A stretch of DNA of 64,000 nucleotides from Haliotis cracherodii (GCF_022045235.1 NW_027266341.1:14694001-14758000); one strand, 5' to 3'; numbered from the stretch's first letter, positions 17,821 to 49,124 are shown. Notes: generated by a model not told the origin, from the sequence alone. A program made the numbers and translations.

Positions 17821-20800
17821 ATGAATCTCAAAATGGTAAGTCAAATTTGTTTGGTTTTCATTTTGCAGAGTTGTATCAAAGCATTGTAAAATTCGCTTCG
17901 AAAGAAATATTTTCCAAGAATTTAGTCAACATTGTACAATTGTCATGTCGCATTGACTTAACACGTTTAGATGAAATTGTTGTGACAAATATGATTGATT
18001 AAAGTAAGAATTCGGCAAATGTAAAAAAGTTGCAAATATCCTATATTCCGATTTGTACTTTTTGTAGCTAAAACGTAAAGAAAACGTTAAATCACTTAAT
18101 ATTCAAGAAATGTTTAATAAATAAATTACAGTAATTTAAACCCGAACGCGCCTAATGCTTGTCCAATGTTTAAATAAGTTTCTTAATACGGTAAATAATG
18201 GTTTCAGTACATATTCGAATTTGATTTGATTTCATTACCTATTTCCAGATTATCTACCTATTCAGTGCATGTGTACTGATCAGTGCTGTGGCTGGACAAT
18301 GCCCGGCTCCTGATGACAATGCATTGAATTTGGAGCCCAACACCACCCTAGCTGTCATACGGTCATACGCTTCTCTCAGGTGAGTTCATGATTGGAAAAA
18401 CTACAGCAATGATGACACCAGGTGTTCGCTTAACTTTGCGATCTAACATCGATTGACATAAGTTGTTTTAACAGTGTTACTTCAATATTTTGAAGAATAA
18501 AACAAATTCAAAATCGAAAATGAAACCTACATGAATTACTAAACTGCCTGACAAATGAAAGTATACACCCTTGTTTGATGGTGGATGACCATAAAACAAA
18601 CCCAGTAAATGGTTACTAGTATTCGATGGGGATGTATTTGATACGTGTGTCATAGTTGTGTTTTGGAACTTAAGTTTGCAATGTGTCAAGGACTATTTTC
18701 AGCTGAGTAACGTTTTGATAACGTTTGTAATTACTTTTAGATCCGTGTATACTTCTTTTGCCCCACAGTTTATTTATATAAAGTCATCCTGTATTTCCAG
18801 ACGACGTATATCAGCGTCTGCAACAGATCGACAGAGCCAGATGTTTCTCAGTGGTCTTGAGAACAGCAAATGCGCGGAGCCCAGGACAGTCCCTGAAGAC
18901 AATCCCGACATCATATCAAGGTATACAAATAATACATATAAATGAAGAATAAATATAATTATCATGAATGAATTACATTTATGATCCTGACGAATGAATC
19001 ATTACCTATCATTAATTGTTCATGGTTTATTGTTTGGTTCTAGTTCCTTTTCTCGATTCCTGCAGGTCGAATTCCAAGCCGCTGTTTGAGGTCAGTCTCG
19101 CCGTCAGTGAATGTGAGCCATGTCCCCCAAGGGTTAATTTCCTCGGCCGCTTCTACGGCAGCTGCTACGTCATCAAACCCAGCGAGCAGCAAGTCAGATA
19201 CGTCTCCTGCGGGTGAGTTTACACGGGATCGTCAAACTACAGCCAGTTGACATAAATATTTGTCACTTCCAATATGGCGGCTGTTTGTTTGCAAAATGTC
19301 GCTTCTTTGAAGAATCGAATTTTGAAAGAAATTTTTAATGGCCTAACTTGGTCAGATTGCTCTTGATACGAATGACTTCATAAGAATCCTAGCTGGAATT
19401 GTGGAATACAAATAGCGAATCCTAGTATACTCCAGACCAATATTGATCCAAATGTCATTGATAGCCGTGAAAAATTCAGCGCGGTTACCGATAGTTTCAG
19501 CCCGTGTTTAAAGACATCTTTCGATTTGTGTTTGATTATTTGTTGTTTAACGCCGCACTCAGCAATATGCCAGCTACATGACGGCGGTCTTTTGATTTTT
19601 AACTAAATGTTCTCAATGATATTGAGATCCGGAGACTGTGCCGGCCATTCCGTCACATTGACATTGTTGTTTTCACAGCGCGTGCCCGCTGAACGGGAGC
19701 ACTGTCATCCTGGAATGTGTACGCTTTGTTGGTAAAAACTGTTGATTTCATTGTCCTTCCTCCAAATGAAAACTCGGTCGTTGGAACCAACCACAACCTG
19801 GCACCACCATCTTCTTCGTCATCTGCGATAGCTCATACCTAACAGTTTCTCTCTGGACAGTGACTGCCTCCGTGGTCTAGTGGAAGAGCGTCCGCCTGGT
19901 GAGCGGAAGGTCCGGGGTTCGATCCCTGACCGCGTCAAACCAAAAGACGTTAAAATATGGTACTTGTTGTTACCCTGTCTGGCGCTCGGCATTAAGGGGC
20001 TAAAACAAGGACTGGTCAGCTCGTAGTCAGTATACTGTGTCTGAGTGGGGTATTCATGTTAAACTGCGCCATGGTATCTCAGTGATCTAGCACTATAAAT
20101 CGGCATCAGCCCGGACTAGTACAAGCAGCCACACAAACACACACACGTACATGCACGTTGCTATATAAGAAGGGGCGGTCGGGTAGCCTAGTGGTTAAAG
20201 CGTTCGCTCGTCACGCCGAAGACCCGGGTTCGATGCCCGACATGGGTACAATGTGTGAAGCCCATTTCTGGTGCCCCCCGCCGTGATATTGCTGGAATAT
20301 TGCTAATAGCGGCGTAAAACCATACTCACTCCACTCGCTATATATCTTGGACGCGACGTTAAATCCAATTTCACCTCACCTCTCTGGACAGTCTTTTGAC
20401 AAAAATGTACTTCATTACCCTCATTAATTATATTAGTCATTTCTTGCAAAGTTGTTTTTCTGTTTCCTTTCACTACCTGTGAAATTCCGTCTCATCTATA
20501 ATGCTAAAAGATTTCTGCCGCCAAATTCGTTCCACATTTTCTACCGAACCGGCCATAATTTCTAGTAATACTGTTGATGGTTGTCCTAGGTATGCCGAAT
20601 ATTATTATTGCCAACACTTAGGGGTTTCCAGTGTGTTCTGATACTTTTTATATTTTCTCGCGGCCCACTGCACAATTCAGGTGATATGCAACCTATAAAT
20701 CCCGCGGCTGACTGTGAAATAACTGAGACAAGCAGACGACATAAGATGGCTGTCACGTGACTCGCACGTTCCGTACAGAGCACACGTGATTCAGCTGGGA

Positions 20801-21274
20801 TGTCCTCGCGCTTCGTGTTTCGTCACATGTTTTGCAGAGCGACGAATATCTAAGTCCAGTAACTGTAGCTCAAATATTTACAGATGGGTAAAGTGATTTG
20901 TTTGAAAAGAGAGTTTGCTCTAGAGAAAATATAATTTGACATGACGTATTACTGAAATATAAATCGTCCGCTGGACATGCTGGATGTCCTGAAGAAAGAG
21001 TGAAAAAAGTTAAATTGTGCGGCTCCTCCTTTCAAAGAAAATACATGCGTGTTTCCAGGCAATTATCTGTAAGTTTGAATTAAGCTGATGCTTTTCTCTC
21101 CACAGCAAAACATGCAAGCAGCCGTGCATGTGTTCCCGGAGCTACTGCCAGAGAACTCACTACACCAAGGTCTGGTTCCTATCTTACTGTACAAGAGGGA
21201 TCGGCGGTTTCCAGAGCGGTTTGAACTTTCGGTTCCTGTGGCTCCCACAAGACTGTGCGTGCAGAAACTATTAA
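17821..21274 (+). CDS. Secreted Spaetzle-like cystine-knot prepro-protein, copy 1 (193 aa)
   Basis: Exons 17821-17835, 18249-18379, 18801-18920, 19066-19212, 21106-21274 (582 nt, GT-AG, phases 0/2/2/2). MNLKMIIYLFSACVLISAVAG|QCPAPDDNALNLEPNTTLAVIRSYASLRRRISASATDRQSQMFLSGLENSKCAEPRTVPEDNPDIISR|SNSKPLFEVSLAVSECEPCPPRVNFLGRFYGSCYVIKPSEQQVRYVSCGKTCKQPCMCSRSYCQRTHYTKVWFLSYCTRGIGGFQSGLNFRFLWLPQDCACRNY*. Signal peptide plus the Q.V...C / C.Q.HY / F..P..CxC spacing of Spaetzle-type knots. Gene structure is high confidence; the family call is moderate. Confidence 0.85.
19240..20865 (-). mobile_element. Decayed Tc1/mariner transposon filling intron 4 of copy 1, with nested SINEs
   Basis: TA-flanked imperfect TIRs (CAGCCAGTTGACATAAATATTTGTCACT versus rc CAGTTACTGGACTTAGATATTCGTCGCT). 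Minus-strand transposase remnants: GIPRTTINSI (HTH), QKTVQR, DD.APVQRAR, WPAQSPDLNIIENI, AINDIW..I...Y...LYSTIPARI. Confidence 0.85.
19862..20380 (+). mobile_element. SINE family C (tRNA head, MetaSINE-like core) carrying a nested SINE A
   Basis: A box TGGTCTAGTGG, B box GGTTCGATCCC, core ...TCAGTGAGCTAGCACTATAAA...CTAGTACAA; TSD CTCTCTGGACAGT. Also at 29452-29970 and 38850-39369; a 5'-truncated copy at 10022-10286 has TSD TCTTGCTGGA. The MetaSINE assignment is from memory of the core. Confidence 0.85.
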
Positions 21275-22044
21275 CTCAATGGTTGACCTCGGCCTCAAGA
21301 GTTATTGGTTCAATGGCATTTCTCCGTAACAGCAAGCTGACTTAATGTTACAGAACTATTATCTGTTTATAAAACATTATCTCTGAGTGTGAAAATATGT
21401 CAGCTTATTTGTGTATATATCTGACTATAGAAAAGCACATTTCCTATATATGCATCTTGATGCATCTGTTCCACAGCATATCATTTTCAGCAGGCATTTT
21501 TACATGGTTTACAAATTACGCCATTCCAAAATGTTGAGAAGTTTTGGAAATCTAATATTTTTCTTTCCTTCGATGTTGGAATGTCGGCCATAAAAAAATC
21601 ACACACATCAAATTTGGCCAATAACAGAATGAAAGACAGAAAAAAACCGTTTTTATTTGTTGTTTTCATTGATATTGTTACAAATGTTGATTTGATGTTA
21701 CAATCATATTATTATTTTGTAAAATGTAGTCAGTTCAGTTTGGTGTGTCATAAAAGAGAAAAAGATTATTCTTGTTTGTGTTTTCTTCGTTTAAAATACA
21801 AGTTTGCAGACGACTATATAATATACCTGGCTCACTTGAATATATATGTTTTGTCTGTGTATATTCACGGGTTGTTCAAGGAAGCCAGGTATATTATATA
21901 GGAGTTCTTTTGTTTATGAATCACGATCGAATAGTGTCGTTAGCATGTGTTTATGAAAAGGTGATCGCATCCTGTCTCACCGCTGACACTATCACAAACA
22001 CACGCAAAGGCAAGTCAATTGTTCACTGAAAAGAAACACTTGAA

Positions 22045-22313
22045 TGAGTGAGTTGGGTTCAATGCCGTTTTTAACAGTATTCCAGTTACATCGCGGTGTT
22101 TCAGCTTAATGTGGGAGGAAAGCCCCAAGTGATGCAGGTCTTTTACCACTTGGGTGAAACCCACGAGCACGGGTTTGGTGCTGACATACCTAAAAACATA
22201 ATCGGGGCGAACCGAGAATCGAACCCACAATCAGAGGTTTCTTGCGTGTTCAAGCGAGGCAACTCTGCACAGCGAATCATGGCGCCTTAGACGACTGGGC
22301 CACACGTGCCCCC
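22045..22313 (-). mobile_element. SINE family B downstream of gene copy 1 (also in units 2 and 3)
   Basis: TSD AGAAACACTTGAA. Confidence 0.88.
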
Positions 22314-22435
22314 AGAAACACTTGAACATACGGTACAAGTTAGAATAGTAAATTACATCGGACATCATTTTTTGTCACTGATGCGTCAATTGGACATGTC
22401 CTCAACATAAGTCATCCCTCATGCCATACAGTCTT

Positions 22436-22530
22436 CATCTTCCCGAGGCAAGGAGTTGACTGACTTTAAAAGTCCAGTTTCCACCCTTGCCGAACTAGGC
22501 TTGAATTCGTGGGCTCGATCGTAGCACCAC
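22436..22530. mobile_element. Solo arm of the 461-862 MITE family at the unit 1/2 junction (also ~32027 and ~41443)
   Basis: CATCTTCCCGAGGCAAGGAGTTGACTGACTTTAAAAGTCCAGTTTCCACCCTTGCCGAACTAGGC..., directly abutting the start of the repeat unit. Confidence 0.85.
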
Positions 22531-25500
22531 CATTTCCAAGGACACATTGCACTTTGGGGCATTCACAGATACAGATGTGTCAAGTGTATTATCATATATA
22601 CAATATATACAGTATTTTATGTTTACTATGACAAATATTTGTTGTTGTAAATGATGAATGAGAAGTGGAAAAAAAGCACTCCGAGTAGCATTTTTTTCGT
22701 TTCTCGAAATAAGAAAATTCAATGTTTATCCATGTTTATTAAATATCGCTGTTGTCAATGCAAGAAGACCGGATTCATCACGATTCAAACTTGGGCATCC
22801 CGTGGGATAGAGAATATAACAAGTATATTACAAATAATTAAATTTGGAAAAGTAGGTAATGAGTAGTCAGTGGTTGGGGAAAAAGTGATCAATTGGAAAT
22901 GATTTGTAGAAACGTTTTTATGTATTTAGACCCCATCGAGAAGGTTAGACTTGATCAAGTAGCTGCCTAGCTAGAGAAAAATTGTTGGACATTTTTCTTA
23001 CGTGTGTCTAAATCAACTATGTTTGCAACAAATCAACGCTCTTTGTTTAATTCCGGTAAGTTAAAACTTCCTAATTTGCCTGGCGATCACTTGTCTCTGT
23101 AAGGCTCTGATTGGCTCGCTGGCCAAATGAACTCACTGTAACTTCATTATAATGCTTCTTTGTGTCTATGTCAACTGTTATAGTAACCCGGCCAGTGGGC
23201 TCTGTCCAGCCGTGCAGCTCGTGTTTATCTCGCTGAATATTTCCAGAGACGAGTCAGTGTCTGTGGCGAAGTGCACAGGTTCATTCGCAAGATGGTGACC
23301 AACTGATATTTCACAAATCCCCATTTGGGACGTCGAGCGTTTCTCGAAATCATATGCATGCATGCAGATGTCTTGCTTAATCCGGATGAAGAGTCAGCAA
23401 AAAGTAAATGATTCAGAGTTAACAAATTAGATGTGTTATTACATTGTCTGCATGAGCGTACACATTGATTTACATCCCAGTTTATGTCATTATGTTTTAT
23501 TACAATATCCATAAACAAATACAGACTCAAACTGTGAAGGTGTATACATTTAGCTGGTCCGTCGTGGGAGAGACTTTCTGCGTAAAGTTGAATGTCAATA
23601 CCCATGTCTTTCTGTATGCTGTCAGTGTTCAGGTGAGGTAAGTGCGTTCTTAGTGTTAGGCGGATAAAAGGCATACAATAAAATTGAAGGGTTATGCACA
23701 TAGGTCGGACCATTTCAAGTGTAAATAAAAAGACATCACTTTCAGATATAAATCGTTTTTCAATCATTGAAACATCCACTGAGAAAGGTACAGTCTCGAT
23801 GGACGAGGTTTTACGGTACAGCAAACAACTTCAAAACACTAAATCTTGGCCAAATAAACCTTTCATAGAAAGTTGAATACACTCAATGTAATGTAACAGT
23901 CTTGTGATATTTAACTAATTTTATCTACCGTGCATGAGTGTAAGAAAATCTGAGATATGTTAAGTAATAATACAAGAGCTGTTAAACCATAGTTTTTAAT
24001 GTACCGAGCTGTGGTGCCCTATAATATACGGTGGGTCTATGGTCTACATCAGTACTGAATGTAAAGTTTACAGAAATAGAACACAGTGATTCTGCTTTCT
24101 GTCCACTCGTGAACAAAAGAGAAGTTAACTGTTTATGGTAAGCCTGGTAAGCCTTGAGTGGGTGTGCCACCTGTAGGTGAGGACATGTTCTTTATCAGAA
24201 CACATGATATGAAAGTGTCTCAAACATGCAGACACCTTTCAAAACAGCATTTTCTCCCATTATGACACAGCACATGTTGAGTCTCAAAGCCTGGCTGCCC
24301 CATCCCCAAAGTCAACTCTACGGCATTGTGAACCACAAAACAGGGGGACCTTATGATGAAAGCTTCATTGAAGAGTATTCCTGTGACATCACGGCGTATC
24401 TTAGGCGTTTACCGGTTTGTTGAAATCTACGACAACGGGTATTGTTATGACAAACCAAGGATCATAATCAGAGCGAAACGAAAAGTCGAACTTAGGAACT
24501 CGCCTAGAGATGCAAATTAGACTAAGACGACAGGGCCACGCGAATCTCCTTATTCACATTATGTATACATGTTTACAAATATGTCTTAAAAGTTAATTTG
24601 TTAAGAACATGTAATATTAAGTTTCGCCTGGGCATAAAAAGATTGTTCCTTTTATCTGTTAACATAGAAACTGCTAATAAACACAAAATGACACTTTGAC
24701 AATGTTCAGTACATATAGGTGCATTTTCAACCCTTGAGGTTATATGTTTTGTTGTTTGTTGTTTAACGCCGCACTCAGCAATATTTCAGCTATATGATTG
24801 GTGTCTGTGAATAATCGAGTCTGAACCAGTGATTGACACCATAAACATCAATCCACGCAATTGGGATACAATGACATTCATCAGCCAAGTCAGCGAGCCT
24901 GACCACCCATTCCGTTAGTCGCCTCTTTCAACAAGCAAAGTCACCTTTTTCGGCAATCACGGGTTGCTGAAGACCTATTCTACCCCGAAACTTCACGGGT
25001 CTGGCGCTATGTGTATAGGAAGTTAAGGTATTGGTTGTACAGATTGACATCTCGTTATAATATGTCTAAATTGCATTTGAAATATACGAGTATGATAGAG
25101 AATAATTCTGTATACAGATATTGTTATGGAGAAGCACAGAGGACGTGTTGGATAAATACAAACATATAAACGTAGTTCTAATGTTTGGTCATGAGATACT
25201 TTTGTTGGTTGGTTGGTTTGTTGTTTTACGTCTCACTCAGCAATATTCCAGCTATATGTCGGTGGTCTGTAAATAATCCAGACTGGACCAGACAATCCAG
25301 TGATTGACACCATGAGCATCGATCCACGCCATTGGGATCGATGACATCGCTGACTTGGTTGATGCATGTCGTCGTATCCAAAATTTGCGTCAACTAAGTC
25401 AGCAACCATGACCACCCAATTCCGTTAGTCGCCTCTTACGACAAACATAGTCGCCTTTTACGGCGAGCATGGGTTGCTGAAGATCTATTCTACCCCGGAT

Positions 25501-26774
25501 CTTCACGGGTCTGATATACCATGCATAAGAATATATTATGAATAAGGATAAAATGTACAGTACTCATCTCTTCATGTCAGTGGTAACACGTATGTAAGAA
25601 CATATTACAAAATATGACATGGGCATGCGTGCTAAAATGTGATTGGTTGAAAACAGTTAAACGAAAAAGGTTAACAGGCAATCTGAGCAAATAATTCAAA
25701 ACGTACTTTGTCTGCTGACTTAAATACAAACCATATACATCGAAATATGAGTTCTTTATACCGTGATTACACAGCGACAATGTCTGAATTTCACACATTT
25801 CAGCGATAACAATGTATGGGCTGGAAATGACTATATACGGCGGACTATTTTACTACCCTTTAAATACGCAAATACGTGTGCAGGAACCAAAATATAAGGT
25901 ACCGTTTTATTCAACAATTCATTGTGTTCTCTTTAATCAGCGATTTTCAATCACATAAAATGTCTTGAAACACCTAAAAAATGAATGTCACGGTTAAGAA
26001 AAGTAAAACATGTTTATCAAATTCTTCTTGAATATATTTAGTTATTCGTGTCAAAATAAATTCCAGGCTCATACATACGCGAAGGGTTGTGGTGAGACTT
26101 GAATGTCAAGAAAATTTGTCCCGCAATACTAGAAACTATACCTGCAGGACACAGCAGATTTGCCTTATATTAAAACATTAATATCATACCATTACCTTGA
26201 AAAGTCATGTCTCATATCAGTTTAGTAATGAAAGTCTATTACTCCACGTCGTGAATACATTGTGCTACAGGCCCGTTGCCCCCTAAGTATGGGCATAAAT
26301 AAATAATTGATCAGTTTCGTATGTTTTGGAGGACATTTTCATATGAGAAAAATGAAGGCATGTACCAATAATGTTTGCTCTTTATACTAAAACAGATACA
26401 ATGAAACCTATAGGGAAACAAAAGTAGACCTTTAACAGCGATGAAGTCTTATACATGGTTAATTTAAAATATTATTATTGAGTAAAATATATTCAACTTG
26501 TTAACAAACTACGAATTCCTTATGTCACATAAAGTCAGCCCTGTTCTTAATCTATCAAGTCGTGCATGAATACAGCGAATCTAAAAATAGAACTAGGCAG
26601 GTCGGATCTTATTATTATGTTTTTATACGGGTGTATAAGCAGAATATATTATCTTACAAAAGGTCACCATGTTATTAATATATCAAATCGTAGTCCTTCA
26701 TAATCTGAAAATAGAACTAGAGACGTTTTCGCTTGATCATTATGTCTTGTCGGGCTTTGAGACGCAACTGCACG

Positions 26775-26964
26775 CATGACTAACCTATTCAATGAGCGTT
26801 GACGTGACAGACTAAAAATAACTCCTAGGGCGCGCACCATCAATAAAGTCGAGTGCTACCCGGATGTCACAACCAGAAGTCAAATGCTACCCGGATGTCA
26901 CAACCAGGAAGTTTCCCAGCCATTGGTGGAATCCTTCTCTTGGGTGGTTCCATAGACTATATAA
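26775..26964 (+). promoter_or_regulatory. Proximal promoter of copy 2 (duplicated ETS block, CRE-like, kB-like, TATA)
   Basis: TGACTAA, TGACGTGA, two copies of TGCTACCCGGATGTCACAACCAG, GGAAGTTTCCC, TATATAA. Confidence 0.55.
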
Positions 26965-27063
26965 GATGCAGGGAGGACGAAGCAGCAAACGTCTCCAAGA
27001 CTGCTAGACAACTCAACCGTAAGCTGACGCGTCTACATCCACCAACCAGCCAGGATCATCAAG

Positions 27064-29249: not shown

Positions 29250-29280
<31 letters not shown>

Positions 29281-30866
29281 ACACAGCATAACAGATACTA
29301 CTTCCTTTTCGGGCACACGAGATGGTGACTGTTGGTTTCATTGTCCTTCCTCCAAATGAAAACTCGGTCGTTGGAACCAACCACAACCTGGCACCACCAT
29401 ATTCTTCATCATCTGCGATAGCTCATACCTAACAGTTTCTCTCTGGACAGTGACCGCCTCCGTGGTCTAGTGGTAGAGCGTCCGCCCGGAGAGCGGAAGG
29501 TTAGGGGTTCGATCCCCGACCGCGTCATACCAAAAGACGTTAAAAGATGGTACTTGTTGTTACCCTGTCTGGCGCTCGGCATTAAGGGGCTAAAACAAGG
29601 ACTGGTCAGCTCGGAGTCAGTATACTGTGTCTGAGTGGGGTATTCATGTTAAACTGCGGCATGGTATCTCAGTGAGCTAGCACTATAAATCGGCATCAGT
29701 CTGGACTAGTACAAGCAGCCACACAAACACACACACGTACATGCACGTCGCTATATAAGAAGGGGCGGTCGGGTAGCCTAGTGGTTAAAGCCTTCGCTCG
29801 TCACGCCGAAGACCCGGGTTCGATTCCCGACATGGGTACAATGTGTGAGGCCCATTTCTGGTGTCTCCCGCCGTGATATTGCTGGAATATTGCTAATAGC
29901 GGCGTAAAAGCATACTCACTCCACTCGCTATATATCTTGGACGCGACGTTAAACCCAATTTCACCTCACCTCTCTGGACAGTCTTTTGACAAAAATGTAC
30001 TTCATTTCCCTCATTAATTATATTAGTCATTCCTTGCAAAGTTGTTTTTCTGTTTCCTTTCACTACCTGTGACATTCCGTCTCATCTCTAATGCTAAAAG
30101 ATTTCCTCCGCCAAATTCGTTCCAAATTTTCTACCGAACCGGCCATAATTTCTAGTAATACTGTTGATGGTTGTCCTAGGTATGCCGAATATTATTATTG
30201 CCAACACTTAGGGGTTTCCAGTGTGTTTTGATACTTTTACAATATTTTCTCGCGGCCCACTGCACAATTCAAGTGATATGGAACCTATAAATCCCGCGGC
30301 TGACGGTGCAATAACTGAGACAAGCAGACGACATAAGATGGCTGTCACGTGACTCGCACGTTCCGTACAGAGCACACGTGATTCAGCTGGGATGTCCTCG
30401 CGCTTCGTGTTTCGTCACATGTTTTGCAAAGCGACGAATATCTAAGTCCAGTAACTATAGCTCAAATATTTACAGATGGGTAAAGTGATTTGTTTGAAAA
30501 TAGAGTTTGCTCTAGGGAAAATATAAGTTGACATGACGTATTACTGAAATATGAATCGTCCGCTGGACATGCTGGATGTCCTGAAGAAAGAGTGAAAAAA
30601 GTTAAATTGTGCGGCTCCTCCTTTCAAAGAAAATACATGCGTGTTTCCAGGCAATTATCTGTAAGTTTGATTTAAACTGATGCTTTTCTCTCCACAGCAA
30701 AACATGCAAGCAGCCGTGCATGTGTTCCCGGAGCTACTGCCAGAGAACTCACTACACCAAGGTCTGGTTCCTATCTTACTGTACAAGAAGGATCGGCGGT
30801 TTCCAGAGCGGTTTGAACTTCCGTTTCCTGTGGCTCCCACAAGACTGTGCGTGCAGAAACTATTAA
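27064..30866 (+). CDS. Spaetzle-like cystine-knot prepro-protein, copy 2 (193 aa)
   Basis: Exons 27064-27078, 27499-27629, 28242-28361, 28507-28653, 30698-30866. Same exon lengths and splice sites as copy 1, open frame. Differences include AASAC (vs AVSEC), PPKV and TRRIG. Confidence 0.85.
28681..30457 (-). mobile_element. Same Tc1 relic in intron 4 of copy 2
   Basis: Same insertion site and TIRs; retains ILENNLWPV..FKDDNAPVQRAR..WPAQSPDLNII. Confidence 0.85.
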
Positions 30867-36565: not shown

Positions 36566-36664
36566 GATGTAGGGAGGACGAAGCAGCAAACGTCTCCAAG
36601 ACTGCAAGACAACTCAACCGTAAGCTGACGCGTCTACATCCACCAACCAGCCAGGATCATCAAG

Positions 36665-39600: not shown

Positions 39601-40269
39601 AACACTTAGGGGTTTCCAGTGTGTTTTGATACTTTTACAATATTTTCTCGCTGCCCACTGCACAATTCAGGTGATATGCAAAAAAAACTATAAATCCCTC
39701 GGCTGACTGTGCAATAACTGAGACAAGCAGACGACATAAGATGGCTGTCACGTGACTCGCACGTTCCGTACAGAGCACACGTGATTCAGCTGGGATGTCC
39801 TCGCGCCTCGTGTTTCGTCACCCGTTTTGCAAAGCAACGAATATTTAAGTCCAGTAACTGTAGCTCAAATATTTGCAGATGGGTAAGGTGATTTGTTTGA
39901 AAAGAGAGTTTGCTCTAGAGAAAATATAATTTGACATGACGTATTGCTGAAATATAAATCGTCCGCTGGACATGCTGGATGTCCTGAAGAAAGAGTGAAA
40001 AATGTTAAATTGTGCGGCTCCTCCTTTCAAAGAAAATACATTCGTGTTTCCAGGCAATTATCTGTAAGTTTGATTTAAGCTGATGCTTTTCTCTCCACAG
40101 CAAAACATGCAAGCAGCCGTGTATGTGTTCCCGGAGCTACTGCCAGAGAACTCACTACACCAAGGTCTGGTTCCTATCTTACTGTACAAGAAGGATCGGC
40201 GGTTTCCAGAGCGGTTTGAACTTTCGGTTCCTGTGGCTCCCACAAGACTGTGCGTGCAGAAACTATTAA
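36665..40269 (+). CDS. Spaetzle-like cystine-knot prepro-protein, copy 3 (193 aa)
   Basis: Exons 36665-36679, 37095-37225, 37647-37766, 37912-38058, 40101-40269. Intact; signal peptide variant IVYLFSACVLIGA, and ALTLEP. Confidence 0.85.
38086..39860 (-). mobile_element. Same Tc1 relic in intron 4 of copy 3
   Basis: Same site, TIRs and transposase remnants. Confidence 0.85.
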
Positions 40270-43200
40270 CTCAATGGTTGACCTCGGCCTCAAGAGTTAT
40301 TGGTTCAATGGCATTTCTCCGTAACAGCAAGCTGACTTAATGTTACTGAACTATTGTCTGATTATAAAACATTATCTCTGAGTGTGAAAATATGTCATGA
40401 TCAACTTATTGGTGTATATATCTGACTATAGAAAAGCACATTTCCTATATATGCATCTTGATGCATCTGTTCCACAGCATATCATTTTCAGCAGGCATTT
40501 TTACATGGTTTACAAATTACGCCATTCCAAAATGTTGAGAAGTTTTGGAAATCTAATATTTTTCTTTCCTTCGATGTTGGAATGTCGGCCATAAAAAAAT
40601 CACACACATCAAATTTGGCCAATAACAGAATGAAAGACAGAAAAAACCGTTTATATTTGTTGTTTTCATTGATATTGTTACAAGTGTTGATTTGATGTTA
40701 CAATCATATTATTATTTTGTAAAATGTAGTCAGTTCAGTTTGGTGTGTCATAAAAGAGAAAAAGATTATTCTTGTTTGTGTTTTCTTCGTTTAAAATACA
40801 AGTTTGCAGACGACTATATAATATACCTGTCTCACTTGAATATATATGTTTTGTCTGTGTATATTCACGGGTTGTTCAAGGAAGCCAGGTGTATTATATA
40901 GGAGTTCTTTTGTTTATGAATCACGATCGAATAGTGTCGTTAGCATGTGTTTATGAAAAGGATATCGCATCCTGTCTCACCGCTGACACTATCACAAACA
41001 CACGCAAAGGCAAGTCAATTGTTCACTGAAAAGAAACACTTGAATGAGTGAGTTGGGTTCAATGCCGTTTTTAACAGTATTCCAGTTAAATCGCGGTGTG
41101 TCAGCTTAATGGGGGAGGAAAGCCCCAAGTGATGCAGGTCTCAGACGTTTACCACTTCGGTGACACCTACGAGCACGGGTTTGGTGCTGACAAACCTAAA
41201 AACATAATCGGGGCGAACCGAGAATCGAACCCACAATCAGAGGTTTCTTGCGTGTTCAAGCAAGGCAACTCTGCACAGCGAATCACGGCGCCTTCGACGA
41301 CTGGGCCACGGTGCCCCCAGAAACATTTGAACATACAGTACAAGTTAGAATTAGTAAATTACATCGGACATCATTTTTTGTCACTGATGCGTCAATTTGG
41401 ATATGTCCTCAACATAAGTCATCCCTCATGCCATACAGTCTTCATCTTCCCGAGGCAAGGAGTTGACTGACTTTAAAAGTCCAGTTTCCATCCTTGCCGA
41501 ACTAGGCTTGAATTCGTGGGCTCGATCGTAGCACCACCATTTCCAAGGACACATTGCACTTTGGGGCATTCACAGATACAGATGTGTCAAGTGTATTATC
41601 ATATATACAATATATACAGTATCTTATGTTTACTATGACAAATATTTGTTGTTGTAAATGATGAATGTGAAATGGAAAAAAGCACTCCGAGTAGCATTAT
41701 TTTCGTTTCTCGAAATAAGAAAATTCAATGTTTATCCATGTTTATTAAATGCCGCTGTTGTCAATAGCAAGAAGACCGGATTCATCACGATTCAAACTCG
41801 GGCATCCCGTGGGATAGAGAATATAACAAGTATATTACAAATAATTAGATTTGGAAAAGTAGGTAATGAGTAGTCAGTGGTTGGGGAAAAAGTGATAAAT
41901 TGGAAATGATTTATAGAAACGTTTTTATGTATTTAGACCCCACCGAGAAGGTTAGACTTGATCAAGAAGCTGCCTAGCTAGAGAAACATTGTTGGACATT
42001 TTTCTTACGTGAGTCTAAATCAACTATGTTTGCAACAAATCAACGCTCTTTGTTTAATTCCGGTAAGTTAAAACTTCCTAATTTGCCTGGCGATCACGTG
42101 TCTCTGTAAGGCTCTGATTGGCTCGCTGGCCAAATGAACTCACTGTAGCTTCATTATAATGCTTCTTTGTGTCTATGTCAACTGCTATAGTAACCCGGCA
42201 AGTGGGCTCTGTCCAGCCGTGCAGCTCGTGTTTATCTCGCTGAATATTTCAGAGTCAGTGTCTGTGGCGAAGTGCACAGGTTCATTCGCAAGATGGTGAC
42301 CAACTGTGTTTCACAAATCCCCATTTGGGACGTCGAGCGTTTCTCGAAATCATGCACGCAGATGTCTTGCTAAATCCGGATGAAGAGTCTAAAGTAAATG
42401 ATTCAGAGTTAAACAAATTAGATGTGTTATTACATTGTCTGCATGAGCGTACACATTGATTTACATCCCAGTTTATGTCATTATGTTTTATTACAATATC
42501 CATAAACAAATACAGACTCAAACTGTGAAGGTGTATACATCTAGCTGGTCCGTCTTGGGAGAAACTTTCTGCGTAGAGTTGAATGTCAATTCCCATGTCT
42601 TTCTGTATGCTGTCAGTGTTCAGGTAAGGTAAATGCGTTCTTAGTGTTAGGCGGATAATAGGCATACAATAAAATTGAGGGGTTATTCACATAGGTCGGA
42701 CCATTTCAAGTGTAATTGAAAATACATCACTTTCAGCCATAAATCCTTTTTCAATCATTGAAACATCCACTGAGAAAGGTACAGTCTCGATGGATGAGGT
42801 TTTACGGTACAGCAAACAACTTTAAAACACTAAATCTTCGCCAAATATACCTTTCATAGAAAGTTGAATACACTCAATGTAATGTAACAGTCTTGTGATA
42901 TTTACCTAATTTTATCTACCGTGCATGAGTGTAAGAAGATCTGAGATATGTTAAGTAATAATACAAGAGCTGTTAAACCATAGTTTTTAATGTACCGAGC
43001 TGTGGTGCCCTATAATATACGGTGGGTCTATGGTCTACATCAGTACTGAATGTAAAGTTTACAGAAATAGAACACAGTGACTCTGCTTTCCGTCCACTCG
43101 TGAACAAAGGAGAACTGTTTATGGTAAGCCTGGTAAGCCTGGTAAGCCTTGAGTGGGTGTGCCAGCTGTAGGTGAGGACATGTTCTTTATCAGAACACAT

Positions 43201-45867
43201 GATATGAAAGTGTCTCAAACATGCAGACACCTTTCAAAACAGCATTTTTTTCCCATTATGACACGGCACATGCCGAATCACAAAGCCTGGCTGCCCCATC
43301 CTCAAAGTCAACTTTACGGCATTGTGAACCACAAAACAGGGGGACCTTATGATGAAAGCTTCATTGAAGAGTATTCCTGTGGTATCACGGCGTAGCTTAG
43401 GCGTTTACCGGTTTAGAGAAATCTACGACGACGGGTATTGTTATGACAAACCAAGGATCATAATCAGAGCGAAACGAAAAGTCGAACTTAGGAACTCGCC
43501 TAGAGATGCAAATTAGACTAAGACGACAGGGCCACGCGAATCTCCTTATTCACATTATGTATATATGTTTACAAATATGTCTTAAAAGTTAATTTGTTAA
43601 GAACATGTAATATTAAGTTTCGCCTGGGCATAAAAAGATTGTTCCTTTTATCTGTTAACATAGAAACTGCTGATAAACACAAAATGACACTTTGACAATG
43701 TTCAGTACATATAGGTGCATTTTCAACCCTTGTGGTTATATGTTTTGTTGTTTGTTGTTTAACGCCGCACTCAGCAATATTTCAGCTATATGATTGGTGT
43801 CTGTGAATAATCGAGTCTGAACCAGTGATTGACACCATGAGCACCAATCCACACAATTGGGATACAATGACATGCATCAACCAAGTCAGCGAGCCTAACC
43901 ACCTCATCCCGTTAGTCGCCTCTTTCAACAAGCAAAGTCGCCTTTTTCGGCAAGCACGGGTTGCTGAAGACCTATTCTACCCCGACACTTCACGGGTCTG
44001 GTGCTATGTGTATAGGAAGTTAAGGTATTGGTTGTACAGTTTGGCATCTCGTTATAATATGTCTAAATCGCATTTGAAATATACGAGTATGATAGAGAGT
44101 AATTCTGTATACAGATATTGTTATAGAGAAGCACAGAGGATGTGTTGGATGAATACAAACATATGAATGTAGTTCTAATGTTTGGTCACGAGATACTTTT
44201 GTTGGTTGGTTGGTTTGTTGTTTTACGCCGCACTCAGCAATATTCCAGCTATATGTCGGTGGTCTGTAAATAATCGAGTCTGGACCAGACAATCCAGTGA
44301 TTGACACCATGAGAATCGATCCACGCCATTGGGATCGATGACATCGCTGACTTGGTTGATGCATGTCGTCGTATCCATATTGCGCCTATCGATGCTCATG
44401 ATGTCAATCACTGGATTGTCTGGTTCAGACTCGATTATTTACAGGCCGCCGTCATAAAGCTGGAATATTCGATGACATGCGTCAACCAAGTCAGCAATCC
44501 TGACCACCCAATCCCGTTAGTCGCCTCTTACGACATCATAGTCGCCTTTTACGGCAAGCATGGGTTGCTGAAGATCTATTCTACCCCGGATCTTCACGGG
44601 TCTGATATACCATGAATAAGAATATACTATGAATAAGGATAAAATGTACAGTACTCATCTCTAAGTGTGTCAGTGGTAACACGTATGTAAGAACATATTA
44701 CAAAATATGACATGGGCATGCGTGCTAAAATGTGATTGGTTGAAAACAGTTAAACGAAAAAGGTAAACAGGCAATCTGAGCAAATAATTCAAAACGTACT
44801 TTGTCTGCTGACTTAAATACAAACCATATACATCGAAATATGAGTTCTTAATACCGTGATTACACAGCGACAATGTCTCAATTTCACACATTTCAGCAAT
44901 AACAATGTATGGGCTGGAAATGACTATATACGGCGGACTATTTTACTAACCTTTAAATACGCAAATACGTGAGCAGGAACCAAAATATAAGGTACCGTTT
45001 TATTTAACAATTCATTGTGTTCTCTTTAATCAGCGATTTTCAATCACATAAAATGTCTTGAAACACCTAAAAAATGAATGTCACGGTTAAGAAAAGTGAA
45101 ACATGTTTATCAAATTCTTCTTGAATATATTTAGTTATTCGTGTCAAAATAAATTCCAGGCTCATACATACGCGAAGGGTTGTGGTGAGACTTAAATGTC
45201 AAGAAAATTTGTCCCGCAATACTAGAAACTACACCTGCAGGACACAGCAGATTTGCCTAATATTAAAACATTAATATCATACCATTACCTTGAAAAGTCA
45301 TGTCTCATATCAATTTAGTAATGAAAGTCTATTACTCCACTTCGTGAATACATTGTGCTACAGGCCCGTGGCCCCCTAAGTACGGGCATAAATAAATAAT
45401 TGATCAGTTTCGTATGTTTTGGAGGACATTTTCATATGAGAAAAATGAAGGCATGTACCAATAACGTTTGCTCTTTATACTAAAACAGATAAAGGAAACC
45501 TATAGGAAAACAAAAGTAGACCTTTAACAGCGATGAAGTCTTATACATGGGTAATTTAAAATATCATTATTGAGTAAAATATATTCAACTTGTTAACAAA
45601 CTACGAATTCCTTATGTCACATCAAGTCAGCCCTGTTCTAAATCTATCAAGTCGTGCACGAATACAGCGAATCTAAAAATAGAACTAGGCGGATCGGATC
45701 TTATTATTATGTTTTTATACGGGTGTATAAGCAGAATATATTATCTTACAAAAGGTCACCATGTTATTAATATATCAAATCGTAGTCCTTCATAATCTAA
45801 AAATAGAACTAGAGACGTTTTCGCTTGATCATTATGTCTTGTCGGGCTTTGAGACGCAACTGCGCGC

Positions 45868-46060
45868 ATGACTAACCTACCTATTTAATGAGCGTTGACG
45901 TGACAGACTAAAAATAACTCCTAGGCCGCGCACCATCAATAAAGTCGAGTGCTACCCGGATGTCACAACCAGAAGTCAAATGCTACCCGGATGTCACAAC
46001 CAGGAAGTTTCCAAGCCATTGGTGGAATCCTTCTCTTGGGTGGTTCCACAGACTATATAA
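45868..46060 (+). promoter_or_regulatory. Proximal promoter of copy 4
   Basis: Same motif set as copy 2; the kB-like core GGAAGTTTCC is retained. Confidence 0.55.
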
Positions 46061-46159
46061 GATGTAGGGAGGACGAAGCAGCAAACGTCTCCAAGACTGC
46101 AAGACAACTCAACCGTAAGCTGACGCGCCGGCATCCACGAACAAGCCAGGATCATCAAG

Positions 46160-49124
46160 ATGAATCTCAAAATGGTAAGTCAAATTTGTTTGGTTTTCAT
46201 TTCGCATTGAGTTGTATTATAGCATTATATCATTGTAAAAATTCGCTTCGAAAGAAATATTTTTCAAGAATTTAGTCAACATTGTACAATTGTCATGTCG
46301 CATTGACTTGACACGTTTAGATGAAATTGTTGTGACAAATATGATTGATTAAAGTAGGAATTTGGCAAATGTAAAAGTTGCAAATATCCTAAATTGGTAT
46401 TTTTACTTTTTTTAGACACAACCTTGAGAAAACGTTAAATCAGTTAATATTCCAGAAATGTGTGATAAAATTACATTAATTTAAACCTGAACGCGTCTAA
46501 TGCATGTCTAATATTTCAATAAGTTTCTTAATACGGTAAATAATGGTTTCGGTACATATTCGAATTTGATTTGATTTCATTACCTATTTCCAGATTGTCT
46601 ACCTATTAAGTGCATGTGTACTGATCAGTGCTGTGGCTGGACAATGCCCGGCTCCTGATGACAACGCATTGAATTTGGAGCCCAACACCACCCTAGCTGT
46701 CATACGGTCATACGCTTCTCTCAGGTGAGTTCATGATTGGAAATACTACAGCAATGATGACACCAGGTTTTCGCTTAACTTTGCGCGTCCTACATCATAA
46801 CGTATCCACGAGTGACATAAGTTCTTGTAACAGTGTCATTTTAATACTTTGAAGAATTAACAAAATAAAGCATAGAAAATGAAGTCTTTGAAAGGCATTT
46901 TGAAGTGATACACATAAGGTGAGTTCATGATTGGAAATACTATAGCAATGACACCTGGTGTTCGCTTAACTTTGCGATCTAACATCGATCGACATAAGTT
47001 GTTTTAACAGTGTTACTTCAATATTTTGAAGAATAAAACAAATTCAAAATCGAAAATGAAACCTACATGAATTACTAAACTGCCTGACAAATGAAAGTAT
47101 ACACCCTTGTTTGATGGTGGCTGACCATAAAACAAACCCAATAAATGGTTACTAGTATTCGATGGGGATGTATTTGATACGTGTGTCATAGTTGTGTTTT
47201 GGAACTTAAGTTTGCAATGTGTCAAGGACTATTTTCAGCTGAGTAACGTTTTGATAACGTTTGTAATTACTTTTAGATCCGTGTATACTTCTTTTGCCCC
47301 ACAGTTTATTTATATAAAGTCATCCTGTATTTCCAGACGACGTATATCAGCGTCTGCAACAGATCGACAGAGCCAGATGTTTCTCAGTGGTCTTGAGAAC
47401 AGCAAATGCGCGGAGCCCAGGACAGTCCCTGAAGACAATCCCGACATCATATCAAGGTATACAAATAATACATATAAATGAAGAATAAATATAATTATCA
47501 TGAATGAATTACATTTATGATCCTGACGAATGAATCATTACCTATCATTAATTGTTCATGATTTATTGTTTGGTTCTACTTCCTTTTCTCGATTCCTGCA
47601 GGTCGAATTCCAAGCCGCTGTTTGAGGTCAGTCTCGCCGCCAGTGCATGTGAGCCATGTCCCCCAAGGGTTAATTTCCTCGGCCGCTTCTACGGCAGCTG
47701 CTACGTCATCAAACCCAGCGAGCAGCAAGTCAGATACGTCTCCTGCGGGTGAGTTTACACGGGATCGTCAAACTACAGCCAGCTGACATAAATATTTGTC
47801 ACTTTCAATATGGCGGCCGTTTGTTTACAAAATTTCGCTTCTTTGAAGAATCGAATTTTGAAAGATATTTTTAATGACCCACATTAAAACGTGGTCCGAT
47901 TCCTCTTCATACGAATCACTTCAAGAATCCTAGCTGGAATACAATTCAATTGGCGAATATACTCCAAACCATTATTGGTCCAAATGTCATTGATAGTCGT
48001 GAAAACTTCAGCGCGGTAACCGATAGTTTCAGCCCGTTTGAAGACCTCTTTCGATTTTTGTTTGTTTTATTGACGTTATTGACGTTTAACGCCGCACTCA
48101 GGTAACATGCCGGCTATTTGACGGCGGTCTTTTGATTTTTAACCAAATGTTCTCAATGATATTGAGATCCGGAGACTGTGCCGGCCATTCCGTCACATTG
48201 ACATTATTACTTTCGATGTACGCTTTCACAGCGCGTGCCTGCTGAATGGGAGCACGTACGGATGATGTAAAAACAGGTCCGAGATTATTGTCAATATATT
48301 TCAGAGGTGTTTCGACACCTTCATAACATACTCAAGGCCTGTAAAAGTTCCGTCTTATCTCTAATCTCGTTACAAATTTCCCGCCGAACACTCTCGCCCA
48401 TGTTTTCTAATTATACTGTTGATGGTTGTCCTAGGTATTTTTCTTGCCAAGTCAGAGTGATTTCCAATATGTTTTGATTCTAATACAATATTTCTCACAG
48501 CCCAATTCATCTGATTTTCGACCTGTAATTCCCGCGACTGACCGTGCAATAACTTGGGCAAGCAGACGACATCAGCTGGCTGTCACGTGACTTGCCATTC
48601 TTTATATAGCACACAAGATTCAGCTGGGATGTCTTTCCGCTTCAGTAAAGGAATGTTTCGTCACACGTTCTGCTTAGTGATTTGCAAAGAGACGAATATT
48701 TAAGTCCAGTAACTGTAGCTCAAATATTTACAGATGGGTAAAGTGATTTGTTTGAAAAGAGAATTTGCTCTAGGGAAAATATAACTTGACATGACGTATT
48801 ACTGAAATATGAATCGTTCGCTGGACATGCTGGATGTCCTGAAGAAAGAGTGAAAAAAGTTAAATTGTGCGGCTCCTCCTTTCAAAGAAAATACATGCGT
48901 GTTTCCAGGCAATTATCTGTAAGTTTGAATTAAGCTGATACTTTTCTCTCCACAGCAAAACATGCAAGCAGCCGTGTATGTGTTCCCGGAGCTACTGCCA
49001 GAGAACTCACTACACCAAGGTCTGGTTCCTATCTTACTGTACAAGAAGGATCGGCGGTTTCCAGAGCGGTTTGAACTTCCGTTTCCTGTGGCTCCCACAA
49101 GACTGTGCGTGCAGAAACTATTAA
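46160..49124 (+). CDS. Spaetzle-like cystine-knot prepro-protein, copy 4 (193 aa)
   Basis: Exons 46160-46174, 46594-46724, 47337-47456, 47602-47748, 48956-49124. Intact; shorter, diverged intron 4; AATAAA at ~49325. Confidence 0.85.
47776..48715 (-). mobile_element. Same Tc1 relic in intron 4 of copy 4: internally deleted, diverged, lacking the nested SINE-C/SINE-A pair
   Basis: Same TIRs and site. ORF 48370-48561 contains the HTH remnant DLARKIPRTTINSIIRKHGR; WPAQSPDLNIIENIW is at ~48190-48140. Confidence 0.85.

What the first reader, a model, noticed from the sequence alone, without database searches (positions are those of the whole stretch)
17821..49124. Four intact tandem genes for an unannotated Spaetzle-like cystine-knot cytokine
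Seen in sequence: five exons join in frame in all four copies to give 193 aa (signal peptide, pro-region, Cys-rich C-terminus). The last exon is absent from the ORF track, which shows a different frame. Established: Drosophila Spaetzle C-106 reads C...IVN..YKQAIQIEEC...C...CKQHYT...LA...FKIPSCCKC. Here the equivalent is C...CYVIKPSEQQVRYVSC..C...C...CQRTHYTKVWFLSYC...FLWLPQDCAC. Inference: this is a lophotrochozoan Spaetzle/NGF-superfamily ligand, possibly for the expanded molluscan Toll-like receptors, whose endogenous ligands are poorly defined. It appears amplified for dosage. It has 11 Cys in the C-terminal domain versus 7 in Spz and lacks the CC of Spz's interchain bond, so it may be a distinct subfamily.
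Basis: partly seen in the sequence, partly recalled or inferred. Interest (0 to 1): 0.9.

Follow-up and report, generated by a model that had tools for sequence, protein, structure and literature searches.

The report
Abalone orphan cystine-knot ligand gene array
Black abalone carries four nearly identical, intact tandem genes for a small secreted protein whose tail is predicted to fold like nerve-growth-factor/Spaetzle-type signalling proteins. The family has no described function, and nothing yet shows that it is a true Spaetzle or a Toll ligand.

Summary
Four ~9.5-kb tandem units each carry an intact five-exon gene with GT-AG introns, encoding 193 aa: signal peptide, pro-region, and a C-terminal domain with 11 Cys.

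The genes are not unannotated. The four spliced proteins are letter-for-letter RefSeq models of Haliotis cracherodii (XP_071088556, XP_071088464, XP_071088440, XP_071088518), all named "uncharacterized protein".

- **Family range:** the family has 9 loci in this genome. Relatives were found only in other Haliotis species and in the vent snail Gigantopelta.
- **Sequence tests:** none links it to Spaetzle, NGF, IL-17 or DAN. Pfam and PDB profile searches found nothing, and hhalign was not significant.
- **Fold:** an AlphaFold model of residues 105-193 (pLDDT 80-89) matches almost only cystine-knot growth factors. Neurotrophins are best (Z 5-6, rmsd 3.0 A over 80 residues); Spaetzle itself is weak (Z 2.5-3.1). 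A second model, of a paralogue, confirms the fold class only weakly.
- **Language-model neighbours:** Spaetzle/NGF clusters, score 0.89, which is a lead only.
- **A better Spaetzle candidate:** an exon elsewhere in this genome (contig C9) looks more like Spaetzle.

Exons stay 98-100% identical where array-edge introns have dropped to 81-88%, so the copies are under constraint or conversion. No RNA evidence could be obtained.

Verdict: an undescribed gastropod branch of the cystine-knot ligand superfamily; the Toll-ligand idea is untested. An earlier report of this scan (s1-826193) described a similar orphan cystine-knot array on another piece of this genome.

The parts
17821..21274 (+). Gene copy 1 (193 aa; = RefSeq XP_071088556.1). 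CDS exons 17821-17835, 18249-18379, 18801-18920, 19066-19212, 21106-21274.
   Evidence: The sequence was read.
27064..30866 (+). Gene copy 2 (193 aa; = XP_071088464.1). CDS exons 27064-27078, 27499-27629, 28242-28361, 28507-28653, 30698-30866.
36665..40269 (+). Gene copy 3 (193 aa; = XP_071088440.1). CDS exons 36665-36679, 37095-37225, 37647-37766, 37912-38058, 40101-40269.
46160..49124 (+). Gene copy 4 (193 aa; = XP_071088518.1 = P0001). CDS exons 46160-46174, 46594-46724, 47337-47456, 47602-47748, 48956-49124. Intron 4 is about 830 nt shorter than in copies 2 and 3.
16421..49500 (+). Tandem array of four units (ATG-to-ATG 9243, 9601 and 9495 nt). Its interior is 97-99% identical between units; its two edges are 73-90% identical outside the exons.
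19066..19212 (+). Exon 4 of copy 1, the first half of the cystine-knot domain (C105, C108, C122, C137). A phase-2 intron follows directly after C137; four of the five paralogues show the same split, with exon 4 ending at the equivalent Cys.
21106..21274 (+). Exon 5 of copy 1, the second half of the cystine-knot domain (C141, C145, C147, C152, C166, C188, C190), followed by the stop codon.
17621..18020 (+). Proximal upstream region, exon 1 and the start of intron 1 of copy 1. It is 95-96% identical to copy 2, although the flanks on both sides are 73-87% identical. It is a candidate conserved promoter/5'UTR block.
   Evidence: That this block is a promoter is an inference.

Best explanation
The array encodes four copies of one member of a small family of secreted pro-proteins, seen so far only in gastropods (Haliotis and Gigantopelta).

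Each protein has three parts:
- a signal peptide (about residues 1-21);
- a poorly conserved pro-region of about 80 residues with two Cys;
- a conserved C-terminal domain of about 90 residues with 11 Cys, predicted to fold as a cystine-knot growth factor of the neurotrophin/Spaetzle/coagulogen type.

The likeliest mechanism is as follows. The protein is secreted, and the knot domain is released from or activated out of the pro-form. Some relatives (one Haliotis paralogue, two Gigantopelta proteins) carry RSKR, RVRR or RRKR furin-type sites just before the domain; the array copies do not. The odd Cys count (11 in the domain in 14 of the 15 members, 13 in the other) would let one Cys link two chains. 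The resulting dimer would then act as an extracellular ligand on a still unknown receptor.

Shown here: gene structure, intactness, family range, sequence constraint and predicted fold class. Inferred: secretion, processing, dimerisation and ligand function.

The array is an old tandem duplication kept homogeneous by gene conversion and/or selection. All four copies share five residues that differ from the red-abalone orthologue.
For: - **Gene models:**, and their identity to RefSeq models.
- **Family:** the exhaustive phmmer search with exon 5 finds only seven family proteins of about 180-198 aa with the same C-terminal domain, from Haliotis and Gigantopelta; its two other hits at E up to 0.001 (P0007, P0009) are long proteins matching only short stretches. 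There are 9 loci in the own genome.
- **Invariant residues:** ten Cys in the domain and the motif L-x-L-P-Q-x-C-x-C are invariant.
- **Conservation pattern:** the knot domain is far better conserved than the pro-region: 83% against 65% with H. asinina, and 37-52% against 17-23% with paralogues.
- **Fold:** the AF2 model has pLDDT 80-89 over residues 105-193.
- **Structural matches, wide search:** it gives NGF at Z 6.0, rmsd 3.0 A over 80 of 99 residues, with model 106-193 on NGF 13-113. The other matches are almost all cystine-knot ligands.
- **Structural matches, second look:** Neurotrophins take 20 of the top 23 rows, at 14-19% identity.
- **Language-model neighbours:** ESM Atlas neighbours of two distant members are Spaetzle/NGF clusters, at 0.89 with 181-188 shared features.
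- **Cys counts and basic sites:**
- **Constraint:** pN/pS is 0.17-0.38 in five of six copy pairs. Exons are 98-100% identical inside introns that are 81-88% identical at the array edges.
Against: - No sequence method links the domain to any known family.
- Structural Z scores of 5-6 are below the level at which the tool's own notes call a match safe. Foldseek E-values are about 0.1.
- The second model, of paralogue P0002, gave only weak matches (coagulogen Z 3.2; noggin, VEGF and IL-17 at E 0.25-3). The fold class is likely, but the sub-type is not settled.
- The disulfide pattern could not be read from the models.
- The homodimer test gave no verdict.
- The array copies have no clear cleavage site before the knot domain.
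Confidence: 0.6

Rival explanations
1. It is a true Spaetzle homologue. A clip-protease cascade would cleave the pro-form (for example after R89 in ...IISR|SNSK...), and the C-terminal dimer would bind and activate one of the abalone Toll/TLR receptors.
For: - It has the same overall plan: signal peptide, pro-region and a C-terminal knot domain of about 100 aa with an odd Cys count.
- Spaetzle/NGF clusters are the nearest language-model neighbours.
- The 13-residue tail FRFLWLPQDCACR resembles FRFFKIPGYCSCR of the abalone Spaetzle-like exon on C9, with 7 of 13 identical. That exon aligns to Drosophila Spaetzle C-106.
- Coagulogen, a Spaetzle relative, aligns over 108-110 residues including the pro-region helix.
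- Endogenous ligands of molluscan TLRs are an open question (PMC3788107).
Against: - Pfam Spaetzle gives no match, even at E 10, on the exons or on seven full-length members.
- None of the weak PF16077 hits in the genome lies at a family locus.
- No PDB sequence match to Spaetzle.
- Solved Spaetzle chains score only Z 3.1 and 2.5, with rmsd above 6 A.
- hhalign against the C9 Spaetzle-like exon gives probability 2%, over the tail only.
- The domain has 11 Cys rather than 7, and no CC.
- No receptor or protease evidence of any kind.
Confidence: 0.15
2. It is a secreted antagonist of the DAN/sclerostin/noggin kind. In that case the cystine-knot protein would bind BMP or Wnt-pathway ligands or co-receptors rather than signalling through a receptor of its own.
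For: - Sclerostin is the second-best structural match (Z 5.2-5.3) and has Foldseek probability 0.95-0.96.
- Noggin tops Foldseek for model 2 and appears in the Atlas lists.
- Exon 4 alone gave a sub-threshold Pfam Sclerostin hit (E 0.027, 14.6 bits against a cut-off of 27).
- C137-x3-C141 has the spacing of the CXGXC ring motif.
Against: - The Pfam hit vanishes with the full-length proteins.
- C141 is not invariant: it is absent in paralogue P0004, so it is unlikely to be a ring cysteine.
- Neurotrophins match with lower rmsd (3.0 against 3.8 A) over slightly more aligned residues (80 against 76-78).
- DAN-family proteins have no cleaved pro-region, whereas some relatives here carry furin-type sites.
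Confidence: 0.1
3. It is a very divergent IL-17-type cytokine.
For: IL-17A, IL-17F and IL-25 appear among the structural matches (Z 4.5-5.0; top Foldseek rows). IL-17 genes are hugely expanded and tandemly arrayed in this genome.
Against: - The Pfam IL17 model finds 47 loci over its cut-off in this genome but none at this family, and it gives no hit on the proteins.
- hhalign against abalone IL-17 gives probability 0.06%.
- Structural alignments show only 7-11% identity and high rmsd.
- IL-17 has no long cleaved pro-region and has only two knot disulfides.
Confidence: 0.05
4. It is a Cys-rich secreted effector with no receptor of its own, such as a defence, mucus, reproductive or structural protein. 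On this view it merely uses a disulfide-rich beta scaffold, and it was amplified because of high demand or an arms race.
For: - The range is taxonomically narrow and no known domain is found.
- Tandem amplification with concerted evolution is common for effector and structural genes.
- Structural scores are modest.
Against: - The matches are almost exclusively signalling ligands or their antagonists.
- The architecture of a pro-region plus a conserved C-terminal domain, with furin-type sites in some relatives, is typical of ligands.
- Copy-to-copy changes are mostly under purifying selection, not diversifying.
Confidence: 0.1

Closest known systems
Neurotrophins (NGF, BDNF, NT-3, NT-4; Pfam PF00243)
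   Same: - Both have a signal peptide, a pro-region and a C-terminal cystine-knot domain of about 100 aa.
- They are the best structural matches: Z 5.0-6.0, rmsd 3.0-3.7 A over about 80 residues, 14-19% identity, with model 106-193 on NGF 13-113.
- That register puts C108, C137, C147, C152, C188 and C190 at the six NGF knot positions. The C137-x9-C147 spacing equals NGF's C58-x9-C68. The NGF residue numbers are from my own knowledge and the mapping is an inference.
- Paralogue P0004 has an RSKR site before the domain.
   Different: - No PF00243 match.
- hhalign against the abalone NGF-like exon is not significant.
- The domain has 11 Cys rather than 6.
- The knot domain is split by an intron after C137.
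- The array copies have no furin site.
- The genome has a separate candidate NGF-like exon (27.1 bits, just over the 27-bit cut-off) on contig C23.
Spaetzle (Pfam PF16077) and horseshoe-crab coagulogen
   Same: - Both have the pro-protein plan and an odd Cys count in the mature domain, which is compatible with one interchain bond.
- The tail motif F-x-F-x-x-(I/L)-P-x-x-C-x-C is shared with the abalone Spaetzle-like exon.
- Language-model neighbours are Spaetzle/NGF clusters.
- Coagulogen aligns over 108-110 residues.
   Different: - No HMM or sequence match.
- Z is only 2.5-3.1 to solved Spaetzle chains.
- No CC pair, and four extra Cys.
- No known activating protease site.
- A closer Spaetzle-like exon exists elsewhere in the genome.
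DAN/sclerostin/noggin antagonists and CTCK domains
   Same: Both have the cystine-knot fold, at Z 4.6-5.3. The C-x3-C ... C-x-C spacing is present in most members.
   Different: The C-x3-C second Cys (C141) is not invariant. Relatives here have a pro-region with furin-type sites. No HMM match over the cut-off.
IL-17 family (Pfam PF06083)
   Same: Both are small secreted proteins with a C-terminal knot-like domain ending in C-x-C. IL-17 genes also form tandem arrays in molluscs.
   Different: The family is not detected by the IL17 model that finds 47 abalone loci over its cut-off. hhalign probability is 0.06%. Structural identity is 7-11%.

Membership tests
Spaetzle (PF16077) | Match to the family HMM at or above the gathering score (27 bits) | tested here: not met
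   No hit at E up to 10 for the four exons or for seven full-length members. The genome-wide PF16077 scan has no hit at any family locus.
Spaetzle (PF16077) | NGF-like cystine-knot fold close to solved Spaetzle C-106 | tested here: inconclusive
   The cystine-knot fold class is supported. However, 3e07_A scores only Z 3.1 (rmsd 6.2 A) and 7b1c_D Z 2.5.
Spaetzle (PF16077) | Seven-Cys pattern with the CC-x-C that carries the interchain bond | tested here: not met
   The domain has 11 Cys, no CC, and ends in C-A-C. The odd count still allows an interchain bond through another Cys; this is an inference.
Spaetzle (PF16077) | Activation by a clip-domain serine protease and binding to a Toll ectodomain | not testable with these tools
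Neurotrophin (PF00243) | Match to the family HMM at or above the gathering score (27 bits) | tested here: not met
   No hit. The only genomic hit over the cut-off is on contig C23, not at this family.
Neurotrophin (PF00243) | Fold superposable on NGF, with the six knot Cys in register | tested here: inconclusive
   NGF is the best match (Z 6.0, rmsd 3.0 A over 80 residues), and the aligned ranges put six Cys in register. But Z is below 8, the second model did not reproduce the match, and the disulfide pairs could not be read.
IL-17 (PF06083) | Match to the family HMM (24 bits) | tested here: not met
   No hit on the proteins. 47 other loci in the genome pass the cut-off. hhalign probability is 0.06%.
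DAN / sclerostin (PF03045, PF05463) | HMM match and an invariant C-x-G-x-C ring motif | tested here: not met
   Exon 4 alone scores 14.6 bits against a cut-off of 27, and the full-length proteins score nothing. C141 is missing in P0004.
Cystine-knot growth-factor/cytokine superfamily (fold level) | Two long beta hairpins held by a knot of three disulfides, ending in C-x-C | tested here: inconclusive
   Model 1 has pLDDT 80-89 over residues 105-193, with strands at 111-118, 133-136, 150-166 and 176-192. Nearly all of its 41 matches at Z>=2 are cystine-knot proteins. Model 2 agrees only weakly. The knot itself (disulfide threading) was not verifiable, because model coordinates are not returned.

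The most novel reading that the evidence does not exclude
This gastropod family is a lineage-specific offshoot of the Spaetzle/neurotrophin stock that serves as an endogenous, protease-activated ligand for some of the expanded molluscan Toll-like receptors. That would give molluscs a cytokine-driven Toll pathway like that of insects. The four-copy array would provide rapid high-level production on infection or injury.
Probability: 0.12. Interest if true: 0.85.

Novelty: new variant of a known kind. Interest (0 to 1): 0.45.

Why it matters
How molluscan Toll-like receptors are activated is unsettled. It has been suggested for oyster TLRs that an endogenous Spaetzle-like ligand may be needed, but none has been shown (PMC3788107).

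This work defines an undescribed family of secreted, cystine-knot-type pro-proteins with nine loci in black abalone, an endangered species with serious infectious disease problems (my own knowledge). That gives a concrete, clonable set of candidate ligands, alongside the more canonical Spaetzle-like and NGF-like exons found in passing.

Even if the receptor turns out not to be a Toll, a new branch of the neurotrophin/Spaetzle/coagulogen fold with five rather than three intrachain disulfides would interest those who study the evolution of this ligand superfamily.

As it stands the case is purely computational. There is no expression or binding evidence.

Tried and rejected
- **Joined model not searched:** the spliced (joined) model was not sent to any search tool. 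Exons were searched by reference. After the exon-5 search returned database proteins identical to the four models, those protein ids were used instead. Joining was done only inside scripts, to translate and compare the copies.
- It was redone by reference.
- **RNA evidence:** There is therefore no read evidence for the junctions.
- The origin of the ENA fragments P0019 and P0020, and the RefSeq neighbourhood, could not be looked up.
- **Homodimer test:** Complex prediction on residues 100-193 gave no verdict (score 0.01 against a mark of 0.32). This is not evidence either way.
- **Word-index searches:** these added only H. asinina and two ENA fragments. The third search, with the C9 Spaetzle-like exon, found nothing, so no set of molluscan Spaetzle proteins was available for a profile-profile test.
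- **CRASP:** the snail atrial Cys-rich protein CRASP (PMC4596865) was considered and rejected. It has 10 Cys in nested, non-knot pairs with different spacing.
- **Literature:** searches by locus names and by 'cystine knot' plus 'abalone' found no description of the family.
- **SINE-like repeats:** ARAGORN found no tRNA-like gene in the SINE-like repeats of intron 4.
- **PolyA signal:** no AATAAA lies on the + strand within 2.4 kb after the stop of copy 1. The 3' end is undefined.

Full report
**Observation**

A direct-repeat search shows four units with start-to-start spacing of about 9.2-9.7 kb between about 16.4 and 49.5 kb. I read copy 1 base by base. It has an ATG at 17821 and then five coding exons: 17821-17835, 18249-18379, 18801-18920, 19066-19212 and 21106-21274.

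Mapping these exons onto the other units by blastn and translating gives the same result in every copy. All introns are GT...AG, the CDS is 582 nt, and the product is 193 aa with no internal stop. The copies differ by 7-9 nt and 3-7 aa in pairwise comparisons.

Two side statements are not:
- The mechanical ORF list does hold the last exon in the correct frame, as a 48-aa ORF at 21128-21274.
- The genes are not unannotated, as shown next.

**Identity of the genes**

I searched exon by exon, by reference.

The exhaustive phmmer search with exon 5 (55 aa) against 1.84 billion representatives returned nine proteins at E up to 0.001. The best was a 193-aa protein. Its sequence, and three members of its 90% cluster, are letter-for-letter the four spliced models. 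They are RefSeq XP_071088518.1, XP_071088464.1, XP_071088440.1 and XP_071088556.1, named 'uncharacterized protein [Haliotis cracherodii]'.

The window is therefore black abalone. NCBI's pipeline reached the same five-exon models. Only the function is unannotated.

**Family**

- Orthologues exist in H. rufescens: LOC124145986 (193 aa) and the nearby partial LOC124145984 (131 aa). There is also one in H. asinina (74% identity).
- More distant paralogues of 180-198 aa exist in Haliotis, and three relatives exist in the vent snail Gigantopelta aegis.
- Two ENA fragments of unknown origin resemble the Gigantopelta proteins.
- In the abalone genome itself, exon 5 and the family profile find nine loci:
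  - the four copies of the array;
  - one locus 18.7 kb beyond the window's end;
  - two loci about 255-265 kb further along the same contig;
  - a pair on contig C7.
- Four of the five paralogues show the split after the Cys equivalent to C137; for the fifth (L009) exon 4 was not mapped.
- The alignment shows ten invariant Cys in the last ~90 residues, an eleventh (C141) that is nearly invariant, and the invariant tail L-x-L-P-Q-x-C-x-C.
- Of the 15 members, 14 have 11 Cys in this domain and one has 13; the full-length ones also have two Cys in the pro-region.
- The knot domain is much better conserved than the pro-region: 83% against 65% with H. asinina, and 37-52% against 17-23% with paralogues.
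- One Haliotis paralogue and two Gigantopelta relatives have RSKR, RVRR or RRKR shortly before the domain. The array copies have only an RRR at residues 49-51 and no clear site near the domain.

**Sequence-level tests of known families**

All of these were negative:
- Pfam finds nothing at E up to 10 in seven full-length members. In the single exons it finds only a sub-threshold Sclerostin hit for exon 4, at 14.6 bits against a cut-off of 27.
- Profiles of the family find no solved chain: not Spaetzle, NGF or IL-17.
- A genome-wide scan with the Pfam models places none of them at a family locus. Spaetzle gives no hit over its cut-off. NGF gives one exon on C23. IL17 gives 47 loci over its cut-off.
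- hhalign of the domain profile is not significant against abalone IL-17 ORFs (probability 0.06%) or the NGF-like exon (0.17%).

**Fold**

An AlphaFold2 model of copy 4, using the nine-sequence alignment, has pLDDT 80-89 over residues 105-193. It shows long paired strands.

- Foldseek against the PDB lists only cystine-knot ligands at the top (IL-17A, VEGF, noggin, sclerostin, NT-3, NGF, Spz1C), but with E about 0.1.
- The Foldseek-independent search over 48,161 chains gives 41 matches at Z>=2, nearly all cystine-knot proteins:

| Match | Z | Notes |
|---|---|---|
| NGF (1sg1_A) | 6.0 | rmsd 3.0 A over 80 of 99 residues; model 106-193 on NGF 13-113 |
| Sclerostin | 5.2 | |
| proNGF | 5.0 | |
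| vWF CTCK | 5.0 | |
| IL-17A | 4.6 | |
| Coagulogen | 4.1 | 108 residues aligned, reaching into the pro-region helix |
| PTTH | 3.9 | |
| Spaetzle 3e07 | 3.1 | |
| Spz1C | 2.5 | |

- In the second look, neurotrophins take 20 of the 23 rows with Z>=5, at 14-19% identity against 7-11% for IL-17.
- The NGF register puts C108, C137, C147, C152, C188 and C190 at the six knot positions. It reproduces NGF's nine-residue gap between the second and third knot Cys. This mapping is my inference; disulfides could not be read because coordinates are not returned.
- A second model, of the Gigantopelta paralogue P0002, is less confident and matches weakly. Coagulogen scores Z 3.2 and sclerostin 2.4. Foldseek's list is again mostly cystine-knot ligands, but at E 0.25-3.

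So the fold class is likely, and the neurotrophin-like sub-type is only the best guess.

**Language-model neighbours**

For residues 100-193 of copy 4 and 98-193 of the distant P0008, the nearest ESM Atlas clusters are Spaetzle/NGF (0.89; 181-188 of 256 features). One of them is a mostly molluscan cluster in which 15% of members carry PF16077. IL-17 follows at 0.85-0.86 and noggin at 0.85. By the tool's own calibration this is a lead, not proof.

**A better Spaetzle candidate elsewhere**

Among the weak PF16077 hits in the genome is an exon on C9:17668432-17668593. Its open frame holds ...C-L-Q-H-Y...F-R-F-F-K-I-P-G-Y-C-S-C-R. Its only PDB sequence hits are Drosophila Spaetzle C-106 (E 0.05, 17 bits).

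The tail of the array protein (FRFLWLPQDCACR) shares 7 of 13 residues with this exon, but hhalign gives only 2% probability. The resemblance to Spaetzle is thus real at the motif level and unproven statistically. The array is not the abalone gene most like Spaetzle.

**Array evolution**

- Inside the array, CDS divergence is 1.2-1.5% and intron or spacer divergence is 1.4-3%.
- At the edges the picture changes. Upstream of copy 1 and in its intron 1, identity to copy 2 is 73-91%. A block from about 17621 to 18020 (proximal upstream region, exon 1 and the start of intron 1) is 95-96% identical.
- In copy 4, intron 4 is 81-88% identical to copy 3 and has lost about 830 nt, while exon 5 and about 250 nt before it are 95-99% identical.
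- All four copies share five residues that differ from the H. rufescens orthologue.
- pN/pS is 0.17-0.38 in five of six pairs (the counts are small).

This is the pattern of an old duplication homogenised by conversion or unequal exchange, with constraint on the exons. It supports functional genes. It says nothing direct about 'dosage'.

**What could not be done**

- The homodimer prediction gave no verdict.
- The literature held in the library does not describe this family. It treats an endogenous ligand for oyster TLRs as an open possibility.

**Verdict**

Membership of the Spaetzle family was tested and not met, and the Toll-ligand role is untested.

It is best filed as an undescribed branch of a known superfamily, seen so far only in gastropods. 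An earlier report of this scan (s1-826193) reached the same kind of conclusion for an orphan cystine-knot array on another piece of this genome. I did not verify whether that array belongs to this family.

Noticed in passing
L012:1492-1788 (-) = G000:C9:17668432-17668593: An exon with a Spaetzle-like C-terminal half (C-L-Q-H-Y ... F-R-F-F-K-I-P-G-Y-C-S-C). PF16077 scores 18.5 bits, below its cut-off. Its only PDB sequence hits are Drosophila Spaetzle C-106 (E 0.05). It is probably the abalone gene most like canonical Spaetzle.
   Followed up: partly
L015:1465-1644 (+) = G000:C23:3389166-3389288: An exon matching Pfam NGF at 27.1 bits, just over the 27-bit cut-off. It ends in ...W-I-Q-V-E-S-S-C-N-C-A and is a candidate canonical neurotrophin gene in abalone.
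   Followed up: no
G000 contigs C3 (0.59-0.72 Mb) and C17 (1.12-1.56 Mb), among others: 47 loci match Pfam IL17 over its cut-off, mostly in two dense tandem clusters. This is a large IL-17 expansion in black abalone.
   Followed up: no
window 52362-52829 (-): An open frame with a von Willebrand factor type A domain (PF00092, E 3.5e-24). It is part of a gene convergent with the array.
   Followed up: no
window 56227-57369 (+): A 380-aa open frame of a Tc1/mariner-type transposase (DDE_3 plus HTH_Tnp_Tc3_2). An N run lies just after it, at 57747-57881.
   Followed up: no
window 19860-20330 and equivalent places in intron 4 of copies 2 and 3; also 10022-10256: Dispersed repeats that look like tRNA-derived SINEs by eye (repeat families D2, D14 and D15). 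ARAGORN calls no tRNA there.
   Followed up: partly
G000:C78:14776660-14776866 (-), 15010058-15013454 (+), 15022336-15023174 (-); G000:C7:17486568-17490374 (+), 17495409-17501365 (-): Five further paralogues of the family. Three are on the same contig as the array and two form a convergent pair on C7. Four keep the exon 4/5 split after the Cys equivalent to C137; in L009 exon 4 was not mapped.
   Followed up: partly
window 18380-18800 versus 27630-28241: Intron 2 comes in two lengths: 421 nt in copies 1 and 3, and 612 nt in copies 2 and 4. The difference is a 191-nt insertion or deletion, so the alternation does not follow array order.
   Followed up: no
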